From assembly GCF_902652985.1 (NCBI RefSeq), contig NC_047017.1:6200001-6264000 (forward strand): a stretch of 64,000 nt of DNA, written 5' to 3'. This document shows positions 14,340 to 46,454 of the stretch, in pieces. Within the stretch, counting starts at the first letter, position 1. Every line of letters starts with the position of its first letter. Made by a program: the position numbers and the translations under genes. Below the pieces are notes generated by a model. That model did not search any database. It was not told the origin of the DNA and was given only the letters and a program-made list of their open reading frames with translations. The stretch comes from Pecten maximus. Lineage: Eukaryota.

Positions 14340-17300
14340 ATGGACAACGAGTAAGTACCCAATAGTAGTCATGATTGATGTTTATTAACGTATTATTTGC
14401 TCATAAAATAGTTTTGTTTTGAAATGTATTGTTTCGTTGTACAGATACTTTTCGACTCAGAAAACATCATTTTGATTATACTAAAGTGCTTGAATACAAC
14501 TTTATAATAAACCACATGCGTCTGCATGCATATCTGGTTATTATTTATAGAAAAACATTAACGTTACGATATTGATATTTTTTTCTGAAAATACTAACCA
14601 AATGCCGACGCGTGTGCTAATACTAATCAAATCACAATTGAATAACGAATATAAGGATAAGGACGTCATTTGTTGTTTAAGTTATTTATATTTATTGTTT
14701 AACTTAACATAATCATCATGTACGTTCACTGACTTTACATTGTATTTAATTTGTTTGTTTCCATACTTCAAAATGTATTTTCTTTTCAGTCATTATGACT
14801 ATCTATTCAAGTATCTGCTGATAGGGGACTCCGGTGTGGGCAAATCTTCCCTGTTACTGAGATTCGCGGTAAGTTCTGACGTCAACAACAAACAACAACA
14901 AACACACAATCAAACACACAAATAAAAGTAAATAAAGTTATGAGGTGCACTAATTACATTTTCGATTATTCATATATGGAATCACATTTCACGGTATTTT
15001 CTATGGAAGTACATATAGCGTGTTCTAAAAAGCAGTGACATCAGTTTTGTACATTCACATATTAAAGGGATTATTACCTTATATTTCAACCTCAGGAATT
15101 GTAGAATTGTAATTTTTGTAATTAACAGAAAGTGTTAGTTTTGTAACATACTCATAGAAAATATAACGTTTTATATCCTTTTCTTAGTGTATTTTAACCA
15201 TATAGACCCTTTAATGTTATTCACATGCTTCAATCAATGTAGTATACACAATATTGTGTTACTACTTCATTACACTGTACGCTTGAAATTACCATATCAT
15301 TAATATTTACAGCGAGATGTCATAGATATTTATAGACTACAATTAAGGATTAACATCAATTATTTTTTCTGTTATACAGTCATAACAGAAAAAAACAGGA
15401 GTGTACTCTAAATAAACCGCGAAGCGGTTTATGAAGAAAGTACACTCCAGTTTTTTATGTTATGACTGTATAACAGAAAAAATAATTTATGTTAATTCTT
15501 ATAATTTAATTTCGTCTTATACACACCAAGATATTTCACTTTCTTTGGCGAACTCTTTTCTGTGATAAATTATTACGCAACGTCATCAGCCAATCAAAAA
15601 TGACGTTACATTTCGCAACGTCAAACATTTTGTTATGGAGGTATAACAAAATTATTTCAGCCAATGAACATGCGTGTTTTATACAAAATTAAATTATTAC
15701 ATCGTAACTCTATTATAATGTACCCTGTCTTCCATATCTATTGTTTTCTTTGATTGACCTATTGAAGCACACGTACATAAACGTCTACGTGTACCCAGGC
15801 AGTAATAAAGAACCTTTCTTTGATATTTTTCTACATCAAATAACATATCGATTTTCAAAAAATGAAATGATTATATTTGAGTATCACTAATTCTGCTGTG
15901 CCTTTTCCCTACAGGATGACGTATTCTCGGACACGTATATCTATACGATAGGAGTAGACTTCGTAAGTACAAAACATCTTTGAATCTTTATTTTAAACAG
16001 TATATATAGCTTTCATTCCAATGAAATATTGATTTGGGATTTTTTATCCATAATTTGATGTTTGAATTCTTTGTTTAGATTAATAAATAATAGATTAATA
16101 GGTAGATTAATAAGAACGTGCAAAAACGCTGTACAAAATATTTTAAAAGAATATGTCTAATGCCAATCAGTCTACAAATTATGTATAAATAATATTAAAT
16201 TTGTAATAAATATTGTGAGATTGATGACCTAGGGTATATCTTAAAATTTACATAAACAGTAGAAAGTGTGGAAAGATGATTGTCTTTTTTTAAATAATTC
16301 TTTCTTTTGCAGAAAATCCGGACAGTTGAAATTGACAGCAGCATAGTGCGACTACAAATTGTAAGTATATTTACGTTTTCTAAACTTTAGGTCCAATATG
16401 ATTGGGACTATATACTATACACTGGTAGCTGATAACACTGTGATACTATTTCGCAGTTGTCCCAGTCAGAAGAAGTTCACGGGTTTTATATTTCGCGCAA
16501 AATTTAGGCTTTGTAAATAATTATCAGTTATAGACCTTTGGTGAGGTCAGTGTGGTGTTATATCAACCTTGTGGAAACATATTAACCGAGGGCGAAGCCG
16601 AAATCAAAGGTCCTTAATTTTATACTTTGTATTTCATTGGTGTGTATTCATCAGTAATTCAATAATTATCTTATATGAATAGATACTATTTTAAATTTAA
16701 ATTACTAAACGAAATACCTTATAATAATTAATTGTCTATCTCAAAAAAAAAAAAAAAAAAATCATATAAAATTTTTTTCAATTAGAATTTCACAAAGTAT
16801 CTCAGACAAATATACCATCATAACCCGCCATTCAGGGATTATCAATATACATGATTTGATATGAAAATGTAGCCCGGGGTCCATTTGGTCCATTGCTCTT
16901 GATTTAGAAATATGGAGTCCATGTATGTGGCTGTTTGTAATTTAGAAACATGATGGATTTTATCTCGCAATGTTTCCTTTCACAAATTAATATAACGCAA
17001 AAAAAAAAAAAAAAACCCAATAAATAAATGAATGAATGAACAAATAAAAAATTAAAATAAAAAAGATAAATAAATAAATAAATGTCAGAAGTGTTTACTG
17101 CAGCATGTTTAAAATGTTGCGCGAAGTCTAGGTCCAATTAGGACAACCGCGAAATATAAACCCCGTGAAATTGAACAACTTTACAGTAAGGAATCCAGAA
17201 AATGTATCTAGTTAATGAAAAATTATTAATCATAATAGCGAATACATTAAGTCAGGGGGAAATGACGCAGAAATACATTTGATAGTCCTACGTACTGATC

Positions 17301-19300
17301 AATTTTCGTACAGTCATATATAGTAACATTACAATACTCACAGGGTTTTCTTCTTCAACGGAATTCCATTTTGGTGACAGGCATTACAACAACACGCCCT
17401 TATACTCCTGGGCGGAAAGTTGATCCCCTCGTTTTAGATCATCGTTTTTTTCTGTATGAATACATATATCACATCCTGTTTCATTTTCCGTTCTAATGTT
17501 GGGGTGTTTATCTATCATCCATACAACAATAGTTTTTTACCGATGCCCCTTTCCTGCTCTAATTTCCTTCCCGCTTATATATAACACAGAACATTATCAT
17601 ATATTCCTTTATACTCCTGAATGTTGAACTCATATGAGTTTTATTTCATTTCATATGCTATTTCTTTTAATGAAGAATTTAATTCATTCATTAAAATATT
17701 TTCTATTTGACAGTGGGATACGGCCGGACAAGAGCGATTCAAAACCATTACGTCATCTTTTTACCGTGGATCACATGGTATAATGATTGTTTATGACGTC
17801 ACTGATATGGTAAGAGACCATAATAAAATCACCATTCCCTAATTGTTTACCAGCTTTTCCTGACGGTTACTAGGTATAGTTCTATGACGTAATACTATAT
17901 TTCTACACACGAATCAATTAAAGGGATATGTCCTTCGTTTGAATTAAGTTAAGGTCGTCAAAATTAAACTCACTGGAAAATATATATTTTTCCAAGTAGT
18001 AAAAGTTATAATTTTTACATAAACAAGGCAGTTTTACGCTCGAGATAGGCCAAAGTTTTTCGAGTATTAAGTCCTGAAAGTTCGACCCGAAGCATTAAAG
18101 ATATACGGTATTTGTATACGATACGCCCTTTTCTTGTACATTTTGACGTTGCATTACCTGTAGGTACAAACACTCATATAATCATCGTTCGGACATAGAT
18201 TTCATCAATAGAAATTGTGCATGTTTCTGATGTTCGAACGAAGGAATTCCCTTCAAGTGTCTGTATATATACTAAAAACAGCTCAATTCACCCAACTTCA
18301 AAAGAAATTTATAATTACGGACGATTTTCTTCTTTTTTTTTATCTGTTATGAGCACAGCAATACTGAACATATTCTCAACAACTGTTGTTTTTGTTAAAT
18401 TAGGAATCATTCCAGAACGTGGAATCATGGATCCAAGAGGTTGACAAATACGGCAGTTGCAACAGCTCAATGATTCTTGTGGGGAATAAGTCGGATATGA
18501 CAGGCAAACGGGTGGTGACGTACGCCATGGGCAAGGTATGAGAGTCTGTTAATCTAGTTTCAACTGATCCGGTTATTGCAAAGTCCTTAATTGGTTTGTT
18601 ACACTCGACAAATTTGCGTTTTTTTTTTAACCAATATCGTTCTTAAAATACCAAACATCTTAAAATTCCAAACCACCGCACGAGAAGAATTAGGCTTACG
18701 AAGCACTGTTATAAAGATATATAGTGTATCGAACTATCAATAAAGAACAGCTGATACAACAAAATTATCGGAAGATTTGTTAAAGTTAAAACTTGTCTTA
18801 TTGACATAGTCAGCATTCATCAAGTGCTGGACGATTTGTAAGTACAGCACGCTGGATTAAAAAAGAAAATAAATAAAACTAGATCAATATTTCATGATGA
18901 TGCATGATTTTGAAGTATTAATCATGACAAATATAAAATAACATTAATAATATAGTATGAAATATAAGGTGTTATATAAATGACATTTTGTATGATTGTT
19001 ATTTCGAATGCTTTGGTTTTATTCATACATCATACATATATAAGAAAATAAATATTAGTTTATTTCTGCATGTTGAATATCATTTCTCCTTTTCAGGAAT
19101 ATGCTGACAGATTAGGTATTCCGTTCGTGGAAACCAGTGCCAAACGTTCTACCAACGTCGAAACGTCATTCATGACAATGGCATCCGAACTAAAAACAAA
19201 AATGGTCGACGGTAAATTAGAGACGACTGGCGTTGGAAATGTAAATGTCCGCAACAGTACACCGGTCACCACAAACTCATATGGGCCATGTACGTGTTGA
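14340..19300 (+). CDS. RAB1: Rab1-like small GTPase, array copy 1 (205 aa; possible 21-aa N-terminal extension from 14193)
   Basis: Exons 14340-14350, 14790-14868, 15915-15962, 16313-16360, 17714-17809, 18404-18535, 19097-19300. Motifs [40 protein letters not shown] and C-terminal CTC. The C-terminal half ([36 protein letters not shown]) is Rab1-type. Confidence 0.92.
15345..15697. mobile_element. Hairpin-bearing non-autonomous element in intron 2 of Rab copy 1
   Basis: Palindrome of about 155 bp (15345-15500, centre aaaccgcgaagcggttt), followed by a core bounded by ataatttaattt/aaattaaattat. A partial relative lies at about 8305-8475. Confidence 0.7.
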
Positions 19301-45600: not shown

Positions 45601-46454
45601 TTAATTAGGAATAATGTAATTTGTTTAATTAGGAATCATTCCGAAACTTGGAAACATGGATTCAGGAGGTTGACAAATACAGCACTTACGACAGCCCTAT
45701 GATTCTTGTGGGGAACAAATCGGACATGACACCCCAACGGGTAGTGACATACACCATGGGCAAGGTAGGAATATAATCGACTTATTGGATAAAGGTTCCA
45801 CTAATATTGTCTTTCGCCAATCAATATTTGTATAATTTTATTTTACCTCTATATTTTATCTATATACATTTATTGAGAATACAACTTGAATAACGCTGGG
45901 AAATATTGACAATGTTCCGTTGTTGTTATTCAAGTTCCACATATGGACAAGGTGTTATATCAGATGCAATGCATAGCTATGAATTTTAAATGGCTAAAAC
46001 TAAGAGACAAACGAGAATACAATGTGTATAACGTTGGGAAATATTGACATACACAAAATTCAGTTGTTCCGTTGTTGTTATGTGGCGGCTGGAATATTTA
46101 AGTTCCAATTATATAGAAAAGGTGTCATATCCATTACAATACAGACTAAACACTTAAAATGTCTAAATTAAGAGACCCAACGACGAATATAAAACTTGAA
46201 GGCGATTTCGTCTCGAAAATTAAGCATACTATAATACCTATTTTCTTCACTTTCAGGAATATGGTGAAAGACTAGGTATTACGTTCATGGAAACCAGTGC
46301 CAAAAGTTCTACCAACGTTGAAGCGTTATTTATGTCACTGACATCCGAAGTCAAAAGCAAAGTTGACAAAGGTGAATTAAATACCACTAGTGGCGATACA
46401 GTGATCGTCCACAGTTCGCCGAGGAACAAGGAATTGCTCTGGTTGTGCTGTTGA
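42685..46454 (+). CDS. RAB1: Rab1-like small GTPase, array copy 5 (201 aa; GC-AG intron 5)
   Basis: Exons 42685-42695, 43488-43560, 44051-44098, 44285-44332, 44789-44884 (donor gcaagt), 45633-45764, 46257-46454. [19 protein letters not shown], ends ELLWLCC. Confidence 0.85.
44936..45287 (+). mobile_element. Hairpin element in intron 5 of copy 5
   Basis: Same insertion as in copies 3 and 4; retains a short segment (tagccaaaaatacag) that is deleted in copies 3 and 4. Confidence 0.8.

What the first reader, a model, noticed from the sequence alone, without database searches (positions are those of the whole stretch)
14340..46454. Tandem array of five intact, divergent Rab1-like genes
Seen in sequence: five head-to-tail 7-exon genes, each with an open frame, G1-G5 boxes and a CC/CXC prenylation motif. 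Established: Rab1 is among the most conserved eukaryotic proteins and is usually single-copy in invertebrates. Every copy here departs widely from the Rab1 consensus, for example DDVFSDTY versus DDTYTESY and KYLL/KLIV/KFIV versus KLLL. Inference: this is a lineage-specific, rapidly evolving Rab1-derived subfamily with a specialised role (immune, secretory/biomineralisation or germline) alongside a canonical Rab1 elsewhere.
Basis: partly seen in the sequence, partly recalled or inferred. Interest (0 to 1): 0.8.

Follow-up and report, generated by a model that had tools for sequence, protein, structure and literature searches.

The report
Scallop-specific Rab1-like gene array
Five intact copies of a diverged Rab1-type trafficking GTPase sit head to tail in the king scallop genome; they belong to an undescribed Rab1-derived family found in at least four scallop genera, an interesting but ordinary kind of lineage-specific Rab gene expansion.

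Summary
Window 14340-46454 holds five + strand, 7-exon genes of 201-205 aa. All have open frames, all five G boxes and CC/CXC ends. One detail was missed: g5 intron 5 has a GC donor.

The genome is Pecten maximus xPecMax1.1. RefSeq already annotates all five as "Rab-1A-like" or "YPTC1-like". I found no paper that describes them.

A single canonical Rab1 lies 34.7 Mb away on the same scaffold. It shares all six intron positions and phases with the array. The copies are 54-64% identical to it, and solved Rab1A is their best match.

Relatives occur in Ylistrum, Argopecten and Mizuhopecten. In Ylistrum, a tandem pair sits at the syntenic locus next to TAF1A. The scallop clade is monophyletic (100/100) on a long stem. 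It carries fixed changes in switch I and switch II (T32V, Y33F, T34S, S36T, R71K, Y77F).

Cross-species dN/dS is 0.04-0.11, so the old g2-type gene is constrained. g3-g5 are young duplicates specific to the Pecten lineage. They are mosaic through unequal crossover or gene conversion, and they have lost the RabF3 "RF".

Expression in P. maximus was not shown: there were no spliced contigs for g3-g5 in four runs. Function, tissue and the age of the family outside scallops remain open.

The parts
14340..19300 (+). g1, Rab1-like gene of the 'g1 type' (205 aa, ERF switch II, GSHG, ends CTC)
   Evidence: Exons are 14340-14350, 14790-14868, 15915-15962, 16313-16360, 17714-17809, 18404-18535 and 19097-19300. 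The model is identical to RefSeq XP_033733922.1 (P0265).
24979..28081 (+). g2, Rab1-like gene of the 'g2 type' (202 aa, DRF switch II, ends CC)
   Evidence: Exons are 24979-24989, 25359-25431, 25988-26035, 26476-26523, 26974-27069, 27400-27531 and 27881-28081. The model is identical to XP_033733923.1 (P0264). dN/dS against the Ylistrum and Argopecten orthologues is 0.04-0.08.
30482..34147 (+). g3, young derived copy (202 aa; switch II ESL, KNQTL in beta2)
   Evidence: Exons are 30482-30492, 31310-31382, 31897-31944, 32131-32178, 32633-32728, 33467-33598 and 33947-34147. The model is identical to XP_033733924.1 (P0350).
36553..40108 (+). g4, young derived copy (202 aa), 98.5% identical to g3
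   Evidence: Exons are 36553-36563, 37293-37365, 37856-37903, 38090-38137, 38592-38687, 39427-39558 and 39908-40108. The model is identical to XP_033733925.1 (P0351).
42685..46454 (+). g5, young derived copy with its own diverged 3' end (201 aa in my model)
   Evidence: Exons are 42685-42695, 43488-43560, 44051-44098, 44285-44332, 44789-44884, 45633-45764 and 46257-46454. RefSeq XP_033736393.1 (P0266, 209 aa) differs only by an acceptor 24 nt upstream of exon 2.
44885..44890 (+). GC-AG splice donor (GCAAGT) of g5 intron 5
   Evidence: The four other copies have GTAAGT or GTAAGA at this site. The RefSeq g5 protein reads across this junction. No spliced contig was seen in the runs laid.
27466..28140 (+). 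3' tract of g2 that is about 100% identical in g2, g3 and g4 (gene conversion or crossover tract). The homologous tracts start near 33533 in g3 and 39493 in g4.
   Evidence: Differences between g2 and g3 are dense up to 27465. There are none from 27466 to 27587, and only four more, at 27588-27615, in the part of the list that was printed. The 200-column windows from about 27660 to 28140 are 100% identical. The break lies just 5' of the NKSD box.
44878..45309 (.). Dispersed high-copy repeat inside intron 5 of g5. It is also present in g3 (about 32729-33130) and g4 (about 38688-39089), is absent from g2 intron 5, and an inverted copy lies at 2698-3029.
   Evidence: Self-BLAST, unit alignment, and contig depths in the hundreds to thousands in the sequencing runs.
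24785..24899 (+). Conserved element 80-190 nt upstream of the start codon of g2. Its counterpart at g1 is 14145-14271. It is likely promoter or 5' UTR.
   Evidence: It is 75-80% identical to Ylistrum L042:9795-9914, upstream of that species' g2-type gene.
50737..60838 (-). Downstream neighbour, orthologue of the TAF1_subA gene (a synteny anchor, not part of the array)
   Evidence: Nine colinear blastn blocks match Ylistrum L042:15660-22663, where the called gene carries PF14929.

Best explanation
The array belongs to a Rab1-derived paralogue family seen so far in scallops (Pectinidae).

Origin (inferred from the tree and synteny). A duplicate of the universally conserved Rab1 gene kept its 7-exon structure. 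It went through a burst of amino-acid change that remodelled switch I (DDTYTES to DDVFSDT), switch II (R71K, Y77F) and parts of the interswitch. It then settled as two gene types, g1 and g2; in Ylistrum these form a tandem pair next to TAF1A. The g2 type has since been held under strong purifying selection.

Expansion in the Pecten maximus lineage. A third gene type (the 5' half of g3-g5) arose from the g2 type. It was multiplied by unequal crossing-over between ~6 kb units. Very recent gene conversion made the 3' ends of g2, g3 and g4 identical.

Likely function. Shown: all nucleotide-binding boxes, the catalytic Gln and the C-terminal geranylgeranylation cysteines are intact. Inferred: the proteins are prenylated, GTP-cycling Rab switches that use the general Rab machinery but read a partner set different from housekeeping Rab1. 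This would be a specialised trafficking step of unknown tissue and cargo. g3-g5 additionally change RabF3 (R69S, F70L) and beta2 (I47N, R48Q). They are either newly specialised or beginning to decay.
For: - Five intact models. Four are identical to RefSeq proteins.
- Canonical Rab1 at C3:40963796-40972451 has the same six intron positions and phases. Rab10, Rab3 and Rab18 matches in the genome begin one codon later, at 'DTAGQ' instead of 'WDTAGQ'.
- PDB ranking for g3: Rab1A 245 bits, Rab1B 241, Ypt1 220, Rab8A 195, Rab35 184. Single exons give the same order.
- Own-genome searches with exons 5 and 6 return only the five copies, then canonical Rab1.
- Relatives exist in Ylistrum, Argopecten and Mizuhopecten. 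Ylistrum has a tandem pair followed by TAF1_subA, colinear with window 50.7-60.8 kb.
- Tree: the scallop clade has 100/100 support and a stem of 0.79, against 0.02-0.1 for nearly all canonical end branches. g2-g5 form a clade (99/95) sister to the Argopecten copies (98/94).
- Thirteen substitutions are fixed in the family at sites conserved from fungi to animals.
- dN/dS: g2 against Ylistrum 0.04, against Argopecten 0.08; g1 against g2 0.17.
- Full CDSs contiguous on 1.4-1.6 kb Logan contigs (L040, L041) indicate spliced transcripts of family members from other samples, one of them 99% identical to an Argopecten protein.
Against: - No spliced contig over g5, or over the near-identical exons of g3/g4, appeared in four runs. 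Two of these are recorded as RNA and two are only guessed to be RNA. Only low-depth unspliced pieces and an intronic repeat were laid.
- No Logan-derived protein falls in the 90% clusters of g1-g5.
- g4 against g5 has dN/dS 0.65. The g3-g5 stem has 11 polarised replacements against 1 synonymous change, although 9 changes could not be polarised.
- g3-g5 break the RabF3 motif, and g5 has a GC donor.
- Placement inside Rab1 rests on similarity ranking and gene structure. The tree contains no other Rab subfamilies and leaves the attachment point unresolved.
- The search that found the relatives barely separated a 75%-identical member from canonical Rab1 (P0303, 180 bits). Homologues outside scallops could have been missed.
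Confidence: 0.75

Rival explanations
1. g3-g5 are redundant young duplicates drifting towards pseudogenes. Only g1 and g2 are working genes.
For: - No spliced contigs for g3-g5 in four runs.
- RabF3 'RF' is replaced by 'SL' in all three.
- g5 has a GC donor.
- dN/dS is 0.65 for g4 against g5 and 0.3 for g2 against g3.
- Replacements are concentrated on the g3-g5 stem, 11 N to 1 S polarised.
Against: - All three keep open frames, splice sites, all G boxes and the CC end.
- g3 against g4 has 3 N to 7 S, dN/dS 0.12.
- The derived residues are shared by three copies, so they predate the last duplications.
- GCAAGT is a workable minor-class donor, and RefSeq models splice there.
- Contigs show presence, not absence.
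Confidence: 0.25
2. Part of the array, especially the g3/g4 pair, is an assembly artefact: two haplotypes or a mis-counted repeat laid out in tandem.
For: - The g3 and g4 units are 97-100% identical over most 200-column windows.
- The species has 1.71% heterozygosity, and the assembly was polished with freebayes (PMC7191990).
- Copy number was not checked with reads here.
Against: - The window has no gaps.
- The units differ by indels and by 83-93% stretches in a mosaic pattern. The u2 intergenic region matches u4 at 99-100% but u3 at only 88-93%, which two alleles cannot produce.
- No extra copies lie on unplaced scaffolds.
- Other scallops also carry 2-3 copies.
- The assembly was made from PacBio long reads and was curated.
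Confidence: 0.1
3. The family is an old bivalve or molluscan Rab1 paralogue that scallops retained and expanded, not a scallop invention.
For: - Synonymous sites against canonical Rab1 are saturated.
- The long stem attaches in an unresolved polytomy.
- An oyster gene also named 'YPTC1-like' (LOC111130783) is reported in haemocytes (PMC13070813).
- My search had little power beyond about 75% identity.
Against: - Among the 120 listed hits, every protein with the family's signature comes from a scallop or is an unnamed transcript contig grouping with scallops.
- Canonical Rab1 of Mya, Octopus, Arion and Lingula was found, but no intermediate forms.
Confidence: 0.2
4. The copies act in host-pathogen conflict, as decoys or effector-resistant Rab1 variants, because Rab1 is a frequent target of intracellular bacteria.
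For: - Y77, the residue AMPylated by Legionella DrrA in Rab1b (textbook knowledge, not tested here), is Phe in all 14 family members.
- Duplicates that recur in single species change switch II or catalytic residues: R69S/F70L in Pecten and Q67K in Argopecten P0273/P0274.
- Other notes of the scan report GTPase arrays elsewhere in this genome (unchecked).
Against: - The old g2-type gene is under strong purifying selection, not diversifying selection.
- Phe at this position is normal in Rab7 and Rab9, by my own knowledge.
- There is no expression, induction or pathogen evidence.
Confidence: 0.08

Closest known systems
Canonical Rab1 / Ypt1 (P. maximus gene at G000:C3:40963796-40972451; human RAB1A/RAB1B)
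   Same: - Best sequence match: 54-64% identity, and Rab1A 245 bits against Rab8A 195.
- Identical 7-exon structure with all six intron positions and phases.
- Same length.
- All G boxes, and RabF1, F2, F4 and F5 nearly unchanged.
- An 'S(T/S)PV...CC' style tail.
   Different: - Thirteen family-wide substitutions at sites invariant or nearly so across the animal, fungal and plant Rab1 sampled, five of them consecutive in switch I, plus R71K and Y77F in switch II.
- A stem branch about ten times longer than any animal or fungal Rab1 branch.
- Multi-copy and tandem.
- g3-g5 lack the RabF3 'RF'.
Taxon-specific Rab expansions / 'RabX' genes (Diekmann et al. 2011, PMC3192815)
   Same: [quoted passage not shown] The scallop array fits this pattern.
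   Different: By that paper's 40% identity rule these genes would still be filed under Rab1, not RabX. The source here is the most conserved Rab of all, and the duplicates sit in one tandem locus with ongoing gene conversion.
Vertebrate RAB1A/RAB1B and RAB35 (formerly Rab1C)
   Same: They are paralogues derived from or close to Rab1 that coexist with it.
   Different: RAB1A and RAB1B remain about 90% identical and keep switch I. Rab35 scores well below Rab1 against the scallop genes (184 against 245 bits). The scallop family is an independent, much more diverged offshoot.

Membership tests
Rab family of small GTPases | G1-G5 nucleotide-binding boxes, including the switch II Gln | tested here: met
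   GDSGVGKS, T in TIGVDF, WDTAGQ, GNKSD and ETSAK are present in all five copies. Pfam Ras PF00071 scores above its cut-off on single exons.
Rab family of small GTPases | RabF1-F5 motifs (IGVDF, KLQIW, RFrsiT, YYRGA, LVYDIT; motif list recalled from Pereira-Leal and Seabra 2000) | tested here: met
   g1 and g2 have IGVDF, RLQIW, RFKTIT, FYRGA/S and IVYDVT/LVYDVT. These are all present with conservative changes.
Rab family of small GTPases | RabF3 'RF' in the young copies g3-g5 | tested here: not met
   g3, g4 and g5 read SLKTIT instead of RFKTIT. Their other four RabF motifs are present.
Rab family of small GTPases | C-terminal double-cysteine geranylgeranylation motif | tested here: met
   CTC in g1 and CC in g2-g5. 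Most relatives end CC, CAC, CCSV or CCA; P0272 has an aberrant tail. Actual prenylation is not testable here.
Rab1 subfamily | Rab1 is the best-scoring subfamily, and identity to it is at least 40% (Rabifier rule, PMC3192815) | tested here: met
   54-64% identity to P. maximus Rab1. PDB ranking is Rab1A 245, Rab1B 241, Ypt1 220, then Rab8A 195, Rab10 192, Rab35 184.
Rab1 subfamily | Gene structure of the species' own Rab1 | tested here: met
   All six intron positions and phases are shared, and the five downstream exons match in size (73/48/48/96/132/198+ nt). Other Rab paralogues in the genome break at different codons.
Rab1 subfamily | Conservation of the Rab1 switch I and switch II residues that are near-invariant in the fungal, plant and animal Rab1 sampled | tested here: not met
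   T32V, Y33F, T34S, S36T, R71K and Y77F are fixed in all 14 family members, against 94-100% conservation in 18 canonical sequences.
Rab1 subfamily | Phylogenetic grouping with Rab1 to the exclusion of Rab8, Rab10 and Rab35 | tested here: inconclusive
   The tree contains only Rab1/Ypt1 and the scallop clade, and the attachment point is an unresolved polytomy. No outgroup Rabs were available as full-length sequences.
Rab1 subfamily | ER-Golgi function (complementation of ypt1; binding of p115, GM130 and TRAPP) | not testable with these tools
   This needs experiments.

The most novel reading that the evidence does not exclude
Scallops maintain a dedicated Rab1-derived trafficking switch, with a remodelled switch I and Y77F, as a tandem locus. 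This locus repeatedly spawns species-specific duplicates with altered catalytic or switch II residues: R69S/F70L in Pecten, and Q67K with D44N in Argopecten. These duplicates would act as GTP-locked or effector-sequestering modulators, for example in defence against intracellular microbes that target Rab1, or in a scallop-specific secretory cell type. They would not be mere redundant copies.
Probability: 0.12. Interest if true: 0.7.

Novelty: new member of a known kind. Interest (0 to 1): 0.4.

Why it matters
Rab1 is among the most conserved eukaryotic proteins. The P. maximus protein is about 90% identical to the vertebrate Rab1A sequences recovered here. A paralogue that changed five consecutive switch I residues, was then frozen under purifying selection across scallop genera, and is still duplicating and recombining is a natural experiment in how a Rab acquires a new partner set. 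It gives a concrete, testable case for the neofunctionalisation model of Rab subfamily birth outside vertebrates. For genome annotation, it shows that the names "Rab-1A-like" and "YPTC1-like" hide one distinct family. It is not a new kind of system, because lineage-specific tandem Rab expansions are well known.

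Tried and rejected
- **Exon 7 profile against the 50% representative library.** All 150 best hits were closer or about equal to canonical Rab1. The family is hidden because it is more than 50% identical to Rab1.
- **Word search with exon 7 alone.** No candidate was returned, because the length window excludes full-length proteins.
- **Alignment A2 (one scaffold plus exon rows).** It was misaligned and was not searched.
- **Alignment A4 (four Rab1 scaffolds plus exon rows).** The alignment was correct, but the profile was dominated by canonical Rab1. 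All 120 listed hits were canonical. A local simulation reproduced the tool's scores and showed the array copies fell just below the list.
- **Design by leave-one-out simulation.** This led to A5, with one scaffold, which worked.
- **Read laying, my single call, spent on g5 (4,001 letters).** There were no joints and no coverage of exons 6 and 7. Expression and the GC donor remain untested.
- **AlphaFold2 on a 32-row alignment.** Mean pLDDT was 55. The secondary-structure order fits a Rab fold, but the model is too poor for a fold search, so none was run.
- **ESM Atlas.** It returned generic Rab clusters only.
- **Rfam on the window.** No match.
- **Literature.** No paper mentions these genes or their accession numbers. 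The scallop 'Rab1*' hits were Rab11A.
- **dN/dS rows involving Ylistrum P0269.** They are invalid because the protein was mapped onto the neighbouring gene. I ignored them.
- **Joined spliced models.** They were never sent to a search tool. Exons were searched by reference. Joined models were built only inside scripts, in /scratch, for alignment, dN/dS and the tree. After the identical RefSeq proteins were used by id.

Full report
**What is in the window.** A six-frame motif scan found five sets of Rab G boxes on the + strand and none on the other strand. I built splice-aware models by reading every boundary. They give five 7-exon genes:

| Gene | Window span | Length | C-terminus |
|---|---|---|---|
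| g1 | 14340-19300 | 205 aa | CTC |
| g2 | 24979-28081 | 202 aa | CC |
| g3 | 30482-34147 | 202 aa | CC |
| g4 | 36553-40108 | 202 aa | CC |
| g5 | 42685-46454 | 201 aa | CC |

Exon sizes are 11/73(79)/48/48/96/132/198-204 nt with matching phases. Every intron is GT-AG except intron 5 of g5, whose donor is GCAAGT (44885). tblastn of the models against the window finds no further exons or fragments. The window has no N runs.

**Which genome, and is it already annotated.** The assembly has 918,306,378 bases in 3,983 pieces. This is exactly the figure published for Pecten maximus xPecMax1.1 (PMC7191990). The window is scaffold C3:6200001-6264000. The proteins returned later by the word search show that RefSeq already models all five genes:
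- XP_033733922.1 and .21: 'Rab-1A-like', g1.
- XP_033733923.1, .24 and .25: 'YPTC1-like', g2-g4.
- XP_033736393.1: 'Rab-1A-like', g5.

Four of these are identical to my models. The g5 model differs only by an acceptor 24 nt upstream of exon 2. I found no paper that mentions these genes or accession numbers. The genome paper does not contain the word Rab.

**Relation to Rab1.**
- Exon-wise searches of solved structures rank Rab1A/B first. Full-length g3 gives Rab1A 245 bits, Rab1B 241, Ypt1 220, Rab8A 195, Rab10 192 and Rab35 184.
- Searching the whole genome with exon 6 returns the five copies and one other locus. Exon 5 returns the five copies, then that same locus, then clearly more distant Rabs.
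- That locus, C3:40963796-40972451 on the minus strand, is a textbook Rab1 ([26 protein letters not shown]..., 205 aa). It has seven exons, and its six intron positions and phases are the same as in the array.
- Matches to other Rabs in the genome begin at 'DTAGQ' rather than 'WDTAGQ', or run across the Rab1 exon ends. The gene structure is therefore a shared derived character of Rab1 and the array.
- The copies are 54-64% identical to this Rab1, and synonymous sites between them are saturated.

**Distribution.** The joined models were not sent to any search tool; exons were searched by reference. An exon 7 profile against the 50% representative library found only canonical Rab1. Exon 7 alone found nothing in the word search because of the length window. 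An alignment of exon rows on four Rab1 scaffolds was swamped by canonical Rab1.

I reproduced the tool's scores locally and used leave-one-out simulations. From these I chose one scaffold plus all 30 exon rows (A5). That search lifted the family above canonical Rab1. It returned the P. maximus proteins plus:
- two from Ylistrum balloti;
- three from Argopecten irradians;
- three from Mizuhopecten yessoensis;
- two from Logan contigs of 1.4-1.6 kb that carry the whole CDS without introns, which indicates spliced transcripts.

In Ylistrum a g1-type and a g2-type gene lie in tandem, followed by TAF1_subA on the other strand. That gene is colinear with window 50.7-60.8 kb, so the locus is orthologous. 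Exon sizes are the same in Ylistrum and Argopecten.

One caution applies. A Mizuhopecten member that is 74-76% identical to g1 and g2 scored no better than canonical Rab1. More distant homologues, for instance in oysters, could have been missed. A C. virginica 'YPTC1-like' gene is reported in haemocytes (PMC13070813), and its relation to this family is unknown.

**Evolution.** In a maximum-likelihood tree the 15 scallop sequences form one clade (100/100). Its stem is 0.79 substitutions per site, while nearly all canonical Rab1 end branches from fungi to vertebrates are 0.02-0.15 (one plant row is 0.37). The attachment point within Rab1 is unresolved, and no other Rab subfamilies were in the tree. 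g1-type genes of the four genera are basal. g2-g5 form a clade (99/95) that is sister to the Argopecten g2-type copies (98/94). g3-g5 therefore arose in the Pecten lineage.

Thirteen substitutions are fixed in the family at sites that are 89-100% conserved in canonical Rab1. In Rab1B numbering they are T32V, Y33F, T34S, S36T, I57V, R71K, Y77F, I85M, V86L, L117I, K129R, A136G and A161L. They are concentrated in switch I and switch II.

| Comparison | dN/dS |
|---|---|
| g2 vs Ylistrum orthologue | 0.04 |
| g2 vs Argopecten orthologue | 0.08 |
| g1 vs g2 | 0.17 |
| g2 vs g3 | 0.32 |
| g3 vs g4 | 0.12 |
| g4 vs g5 | 0.65 |
| Argopecten P0268 vs P0273 | 0.59 |

On the g3-g5 stem, 11 replacements and 1 synonymous change could be polarised, against 1 and 6 on the g2 branch. 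Nine changes could not be polarised, so the stem dN/dS lies anywhere between about 0.3 and 3. The pattern is a burst of change, then long constraint on the old g2-type gene, then faster change in recent species-specific duplicates.

**Architecture of the array.** Self-comparison shows ~6 kb units for g3, g4 and g5 that are 93-95% identical overall and 97-100% identical in most windows, including introns and spacers. The 5' half of g2 is only 65-87% like them. The 3' end of g5 is 89-94% like theirs.

Between g2 and g3, differences are dense up to 27465. They then stop just before the NKSD box. g2, g3 and g4 are essentially identical from there to about 28140. The spacer after g2 matches the one after g4 (99-100%) better than the one after g3 (88-93%).

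This mosaic requires several unequal crossovers or conversion events. It is hard to reconcile with a simple haplotype duplication artefact, but copy number was not checked with reads. A dispersed repeat sits in intron 5 of g3-g5 and is absent from g2.

**Expression.** The run index listed runs of the same organism holding 16-29% of the words of the g2 stretch; four are recorded as RNA and most of the rest are only guessed to be RNA. It showed no joints and no coverage of exons 6 and 7. Only low-depth unspliced pieces and the intronic repeat were laid, and one contig continued into g2-like intron sequence.

Exons 2, 3 and 5 of g3-g5 are nearly identical, so mature mRNA of any of the three should have been laid. 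No Logan-derived protein sits in the 90% clusters of g1-g5. Expression in P. maximus is therefore not shown. Contigs cannot prove absence.

**Mechanism.**
- Shown: intact nucleotide-binding and catalytic residues, intact prenylation cysteines, and long-term purifying selection on the g2 type over the whole length. The tail ([14 protein letters not shown]) recurs in three of the four genera and in a close variant in the fourth.
- Inferred: these are working, membrane-anchored Rab switches that still use the general Rab machinery. Their effector-facing switch I and switch II surface differs from housekeeping Rab1, so they should serve a separate trafficking step.
- g3-g5 change RabF3 (R69S, F70L) and beta2 (I47N, R48Q). 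Two Argopecten copies have Q67K and D44N. Such copies may be regulators with altered cycling, or may be decaying.
The Y77F change removes the tyrosine that Legionella DrrA modifies in Rab1b (my own knowledge). Phe is normal at this position in Rab7 and Rab9, so this alone says little.
- The AlphaFold model was of low confidence (pLDDT 55) and was not used.

**Verdict.** The finding is a real, intact and already annotated, but undescribed, Rab1-derived gene family of scallops. It is expanded to five tandem copies in P. maximus by recent unequal crossover and gene conversion. It is a new member of a well-known kind of event, taxon-specific Rab expansion (PMC3192815). It is made somewhat more interesting by the extreme conservation of its parent gene and by the remodelled switch I. 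Interest 0.4.

Noticed in passing
window 14193-14218 and 24830-24855: About 150 nt upstream of the start exon, g1 and g2 share a second short ATG-initiated open frame (MTQDRNST / MTHNQNPT). It ends in CT|GTAAGT in the phase that would splice in frame to exon 2. It lies inside a block that is also conserved upstream of the Ylistrum g2-type gene. It could be an alternative first coding exon or part of the 5' UTR or promoter. g3-g5 lack it.
   Followed up: partly
window 44878-45309 (also about 32729-33130, 38688-39089, and inverted at 2698-3029): A dispersed repeat in intron 5 of g3-g5 has contig depths of hundreds to thousands in the laid runs (two recorded as RNA, two guessed). It is a highly abundant, probably transcribed, mobile element. 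It is absent from g2's intron 5, whose homology to g3's intron resumes just 3' of it. I did not classify it.
   Followed up: partly
P0273 and P0274 (Argopecten irradians; cDNA contig L041): Two recent Argopecten copies of the family have Lys in place of the catalytic switch II Gln (WDTAGKDRF) and VGVNF in place of TIGVDF. One of them is on a spliced transcript contig. dN/dS against the neighbouring copy P0268 is 0.59.
   Followed up: partly
window 43464-43487: The RefSeq g5 model (XP_033736393.1, 209 aa) uses an AG 24 nt upstream of the exon 2 acceptor and so adds ISIYSLFS. The sequence there is identical in g4, which RefSeq models with the normal acceptor.
   Followed up: no
window 889-1235, 1987-2391, 7010-7411: Three conspicuous tandem arrays lie upstream of the Rab array: 45 nt x 7.6 (95% matches), 45 nt x 9.0 (99% matches) and 16 nt x 25. 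The two 45-mers are unrelated to each other, and ORFs of 126-153 aa run through them.
   Followed up: no
window 50737-60838 (- strand): The downstream neighbour is the orthologue of a TAF1_subA (PF14929) gene, colinear with Ylistrum balloti. In Ylistrum, an EF-hand gene follows on the far side.
   Followed up: partly
G000:C3:26288489-26295078 (L029, L039) and C3:26535036 (L020): Other odd Rab-like exons lie on the same scaffold. Two neighbours read WDTAGGERYRG / WDTYGGERYRG, so they lack the catalytic Gln. One reads [21 protein letters not shown].
   Followed up: no
PMC13070813 (Crassostrea virginica LOC111130783): An oyster gene also named 'GTP-binding protein YPTC1-like' is reported as more highly expressed in circulatory than in mucosal agranulocyte haemocytes. 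Whether it belongs to the scallop family is unknown.
   Followed up: no
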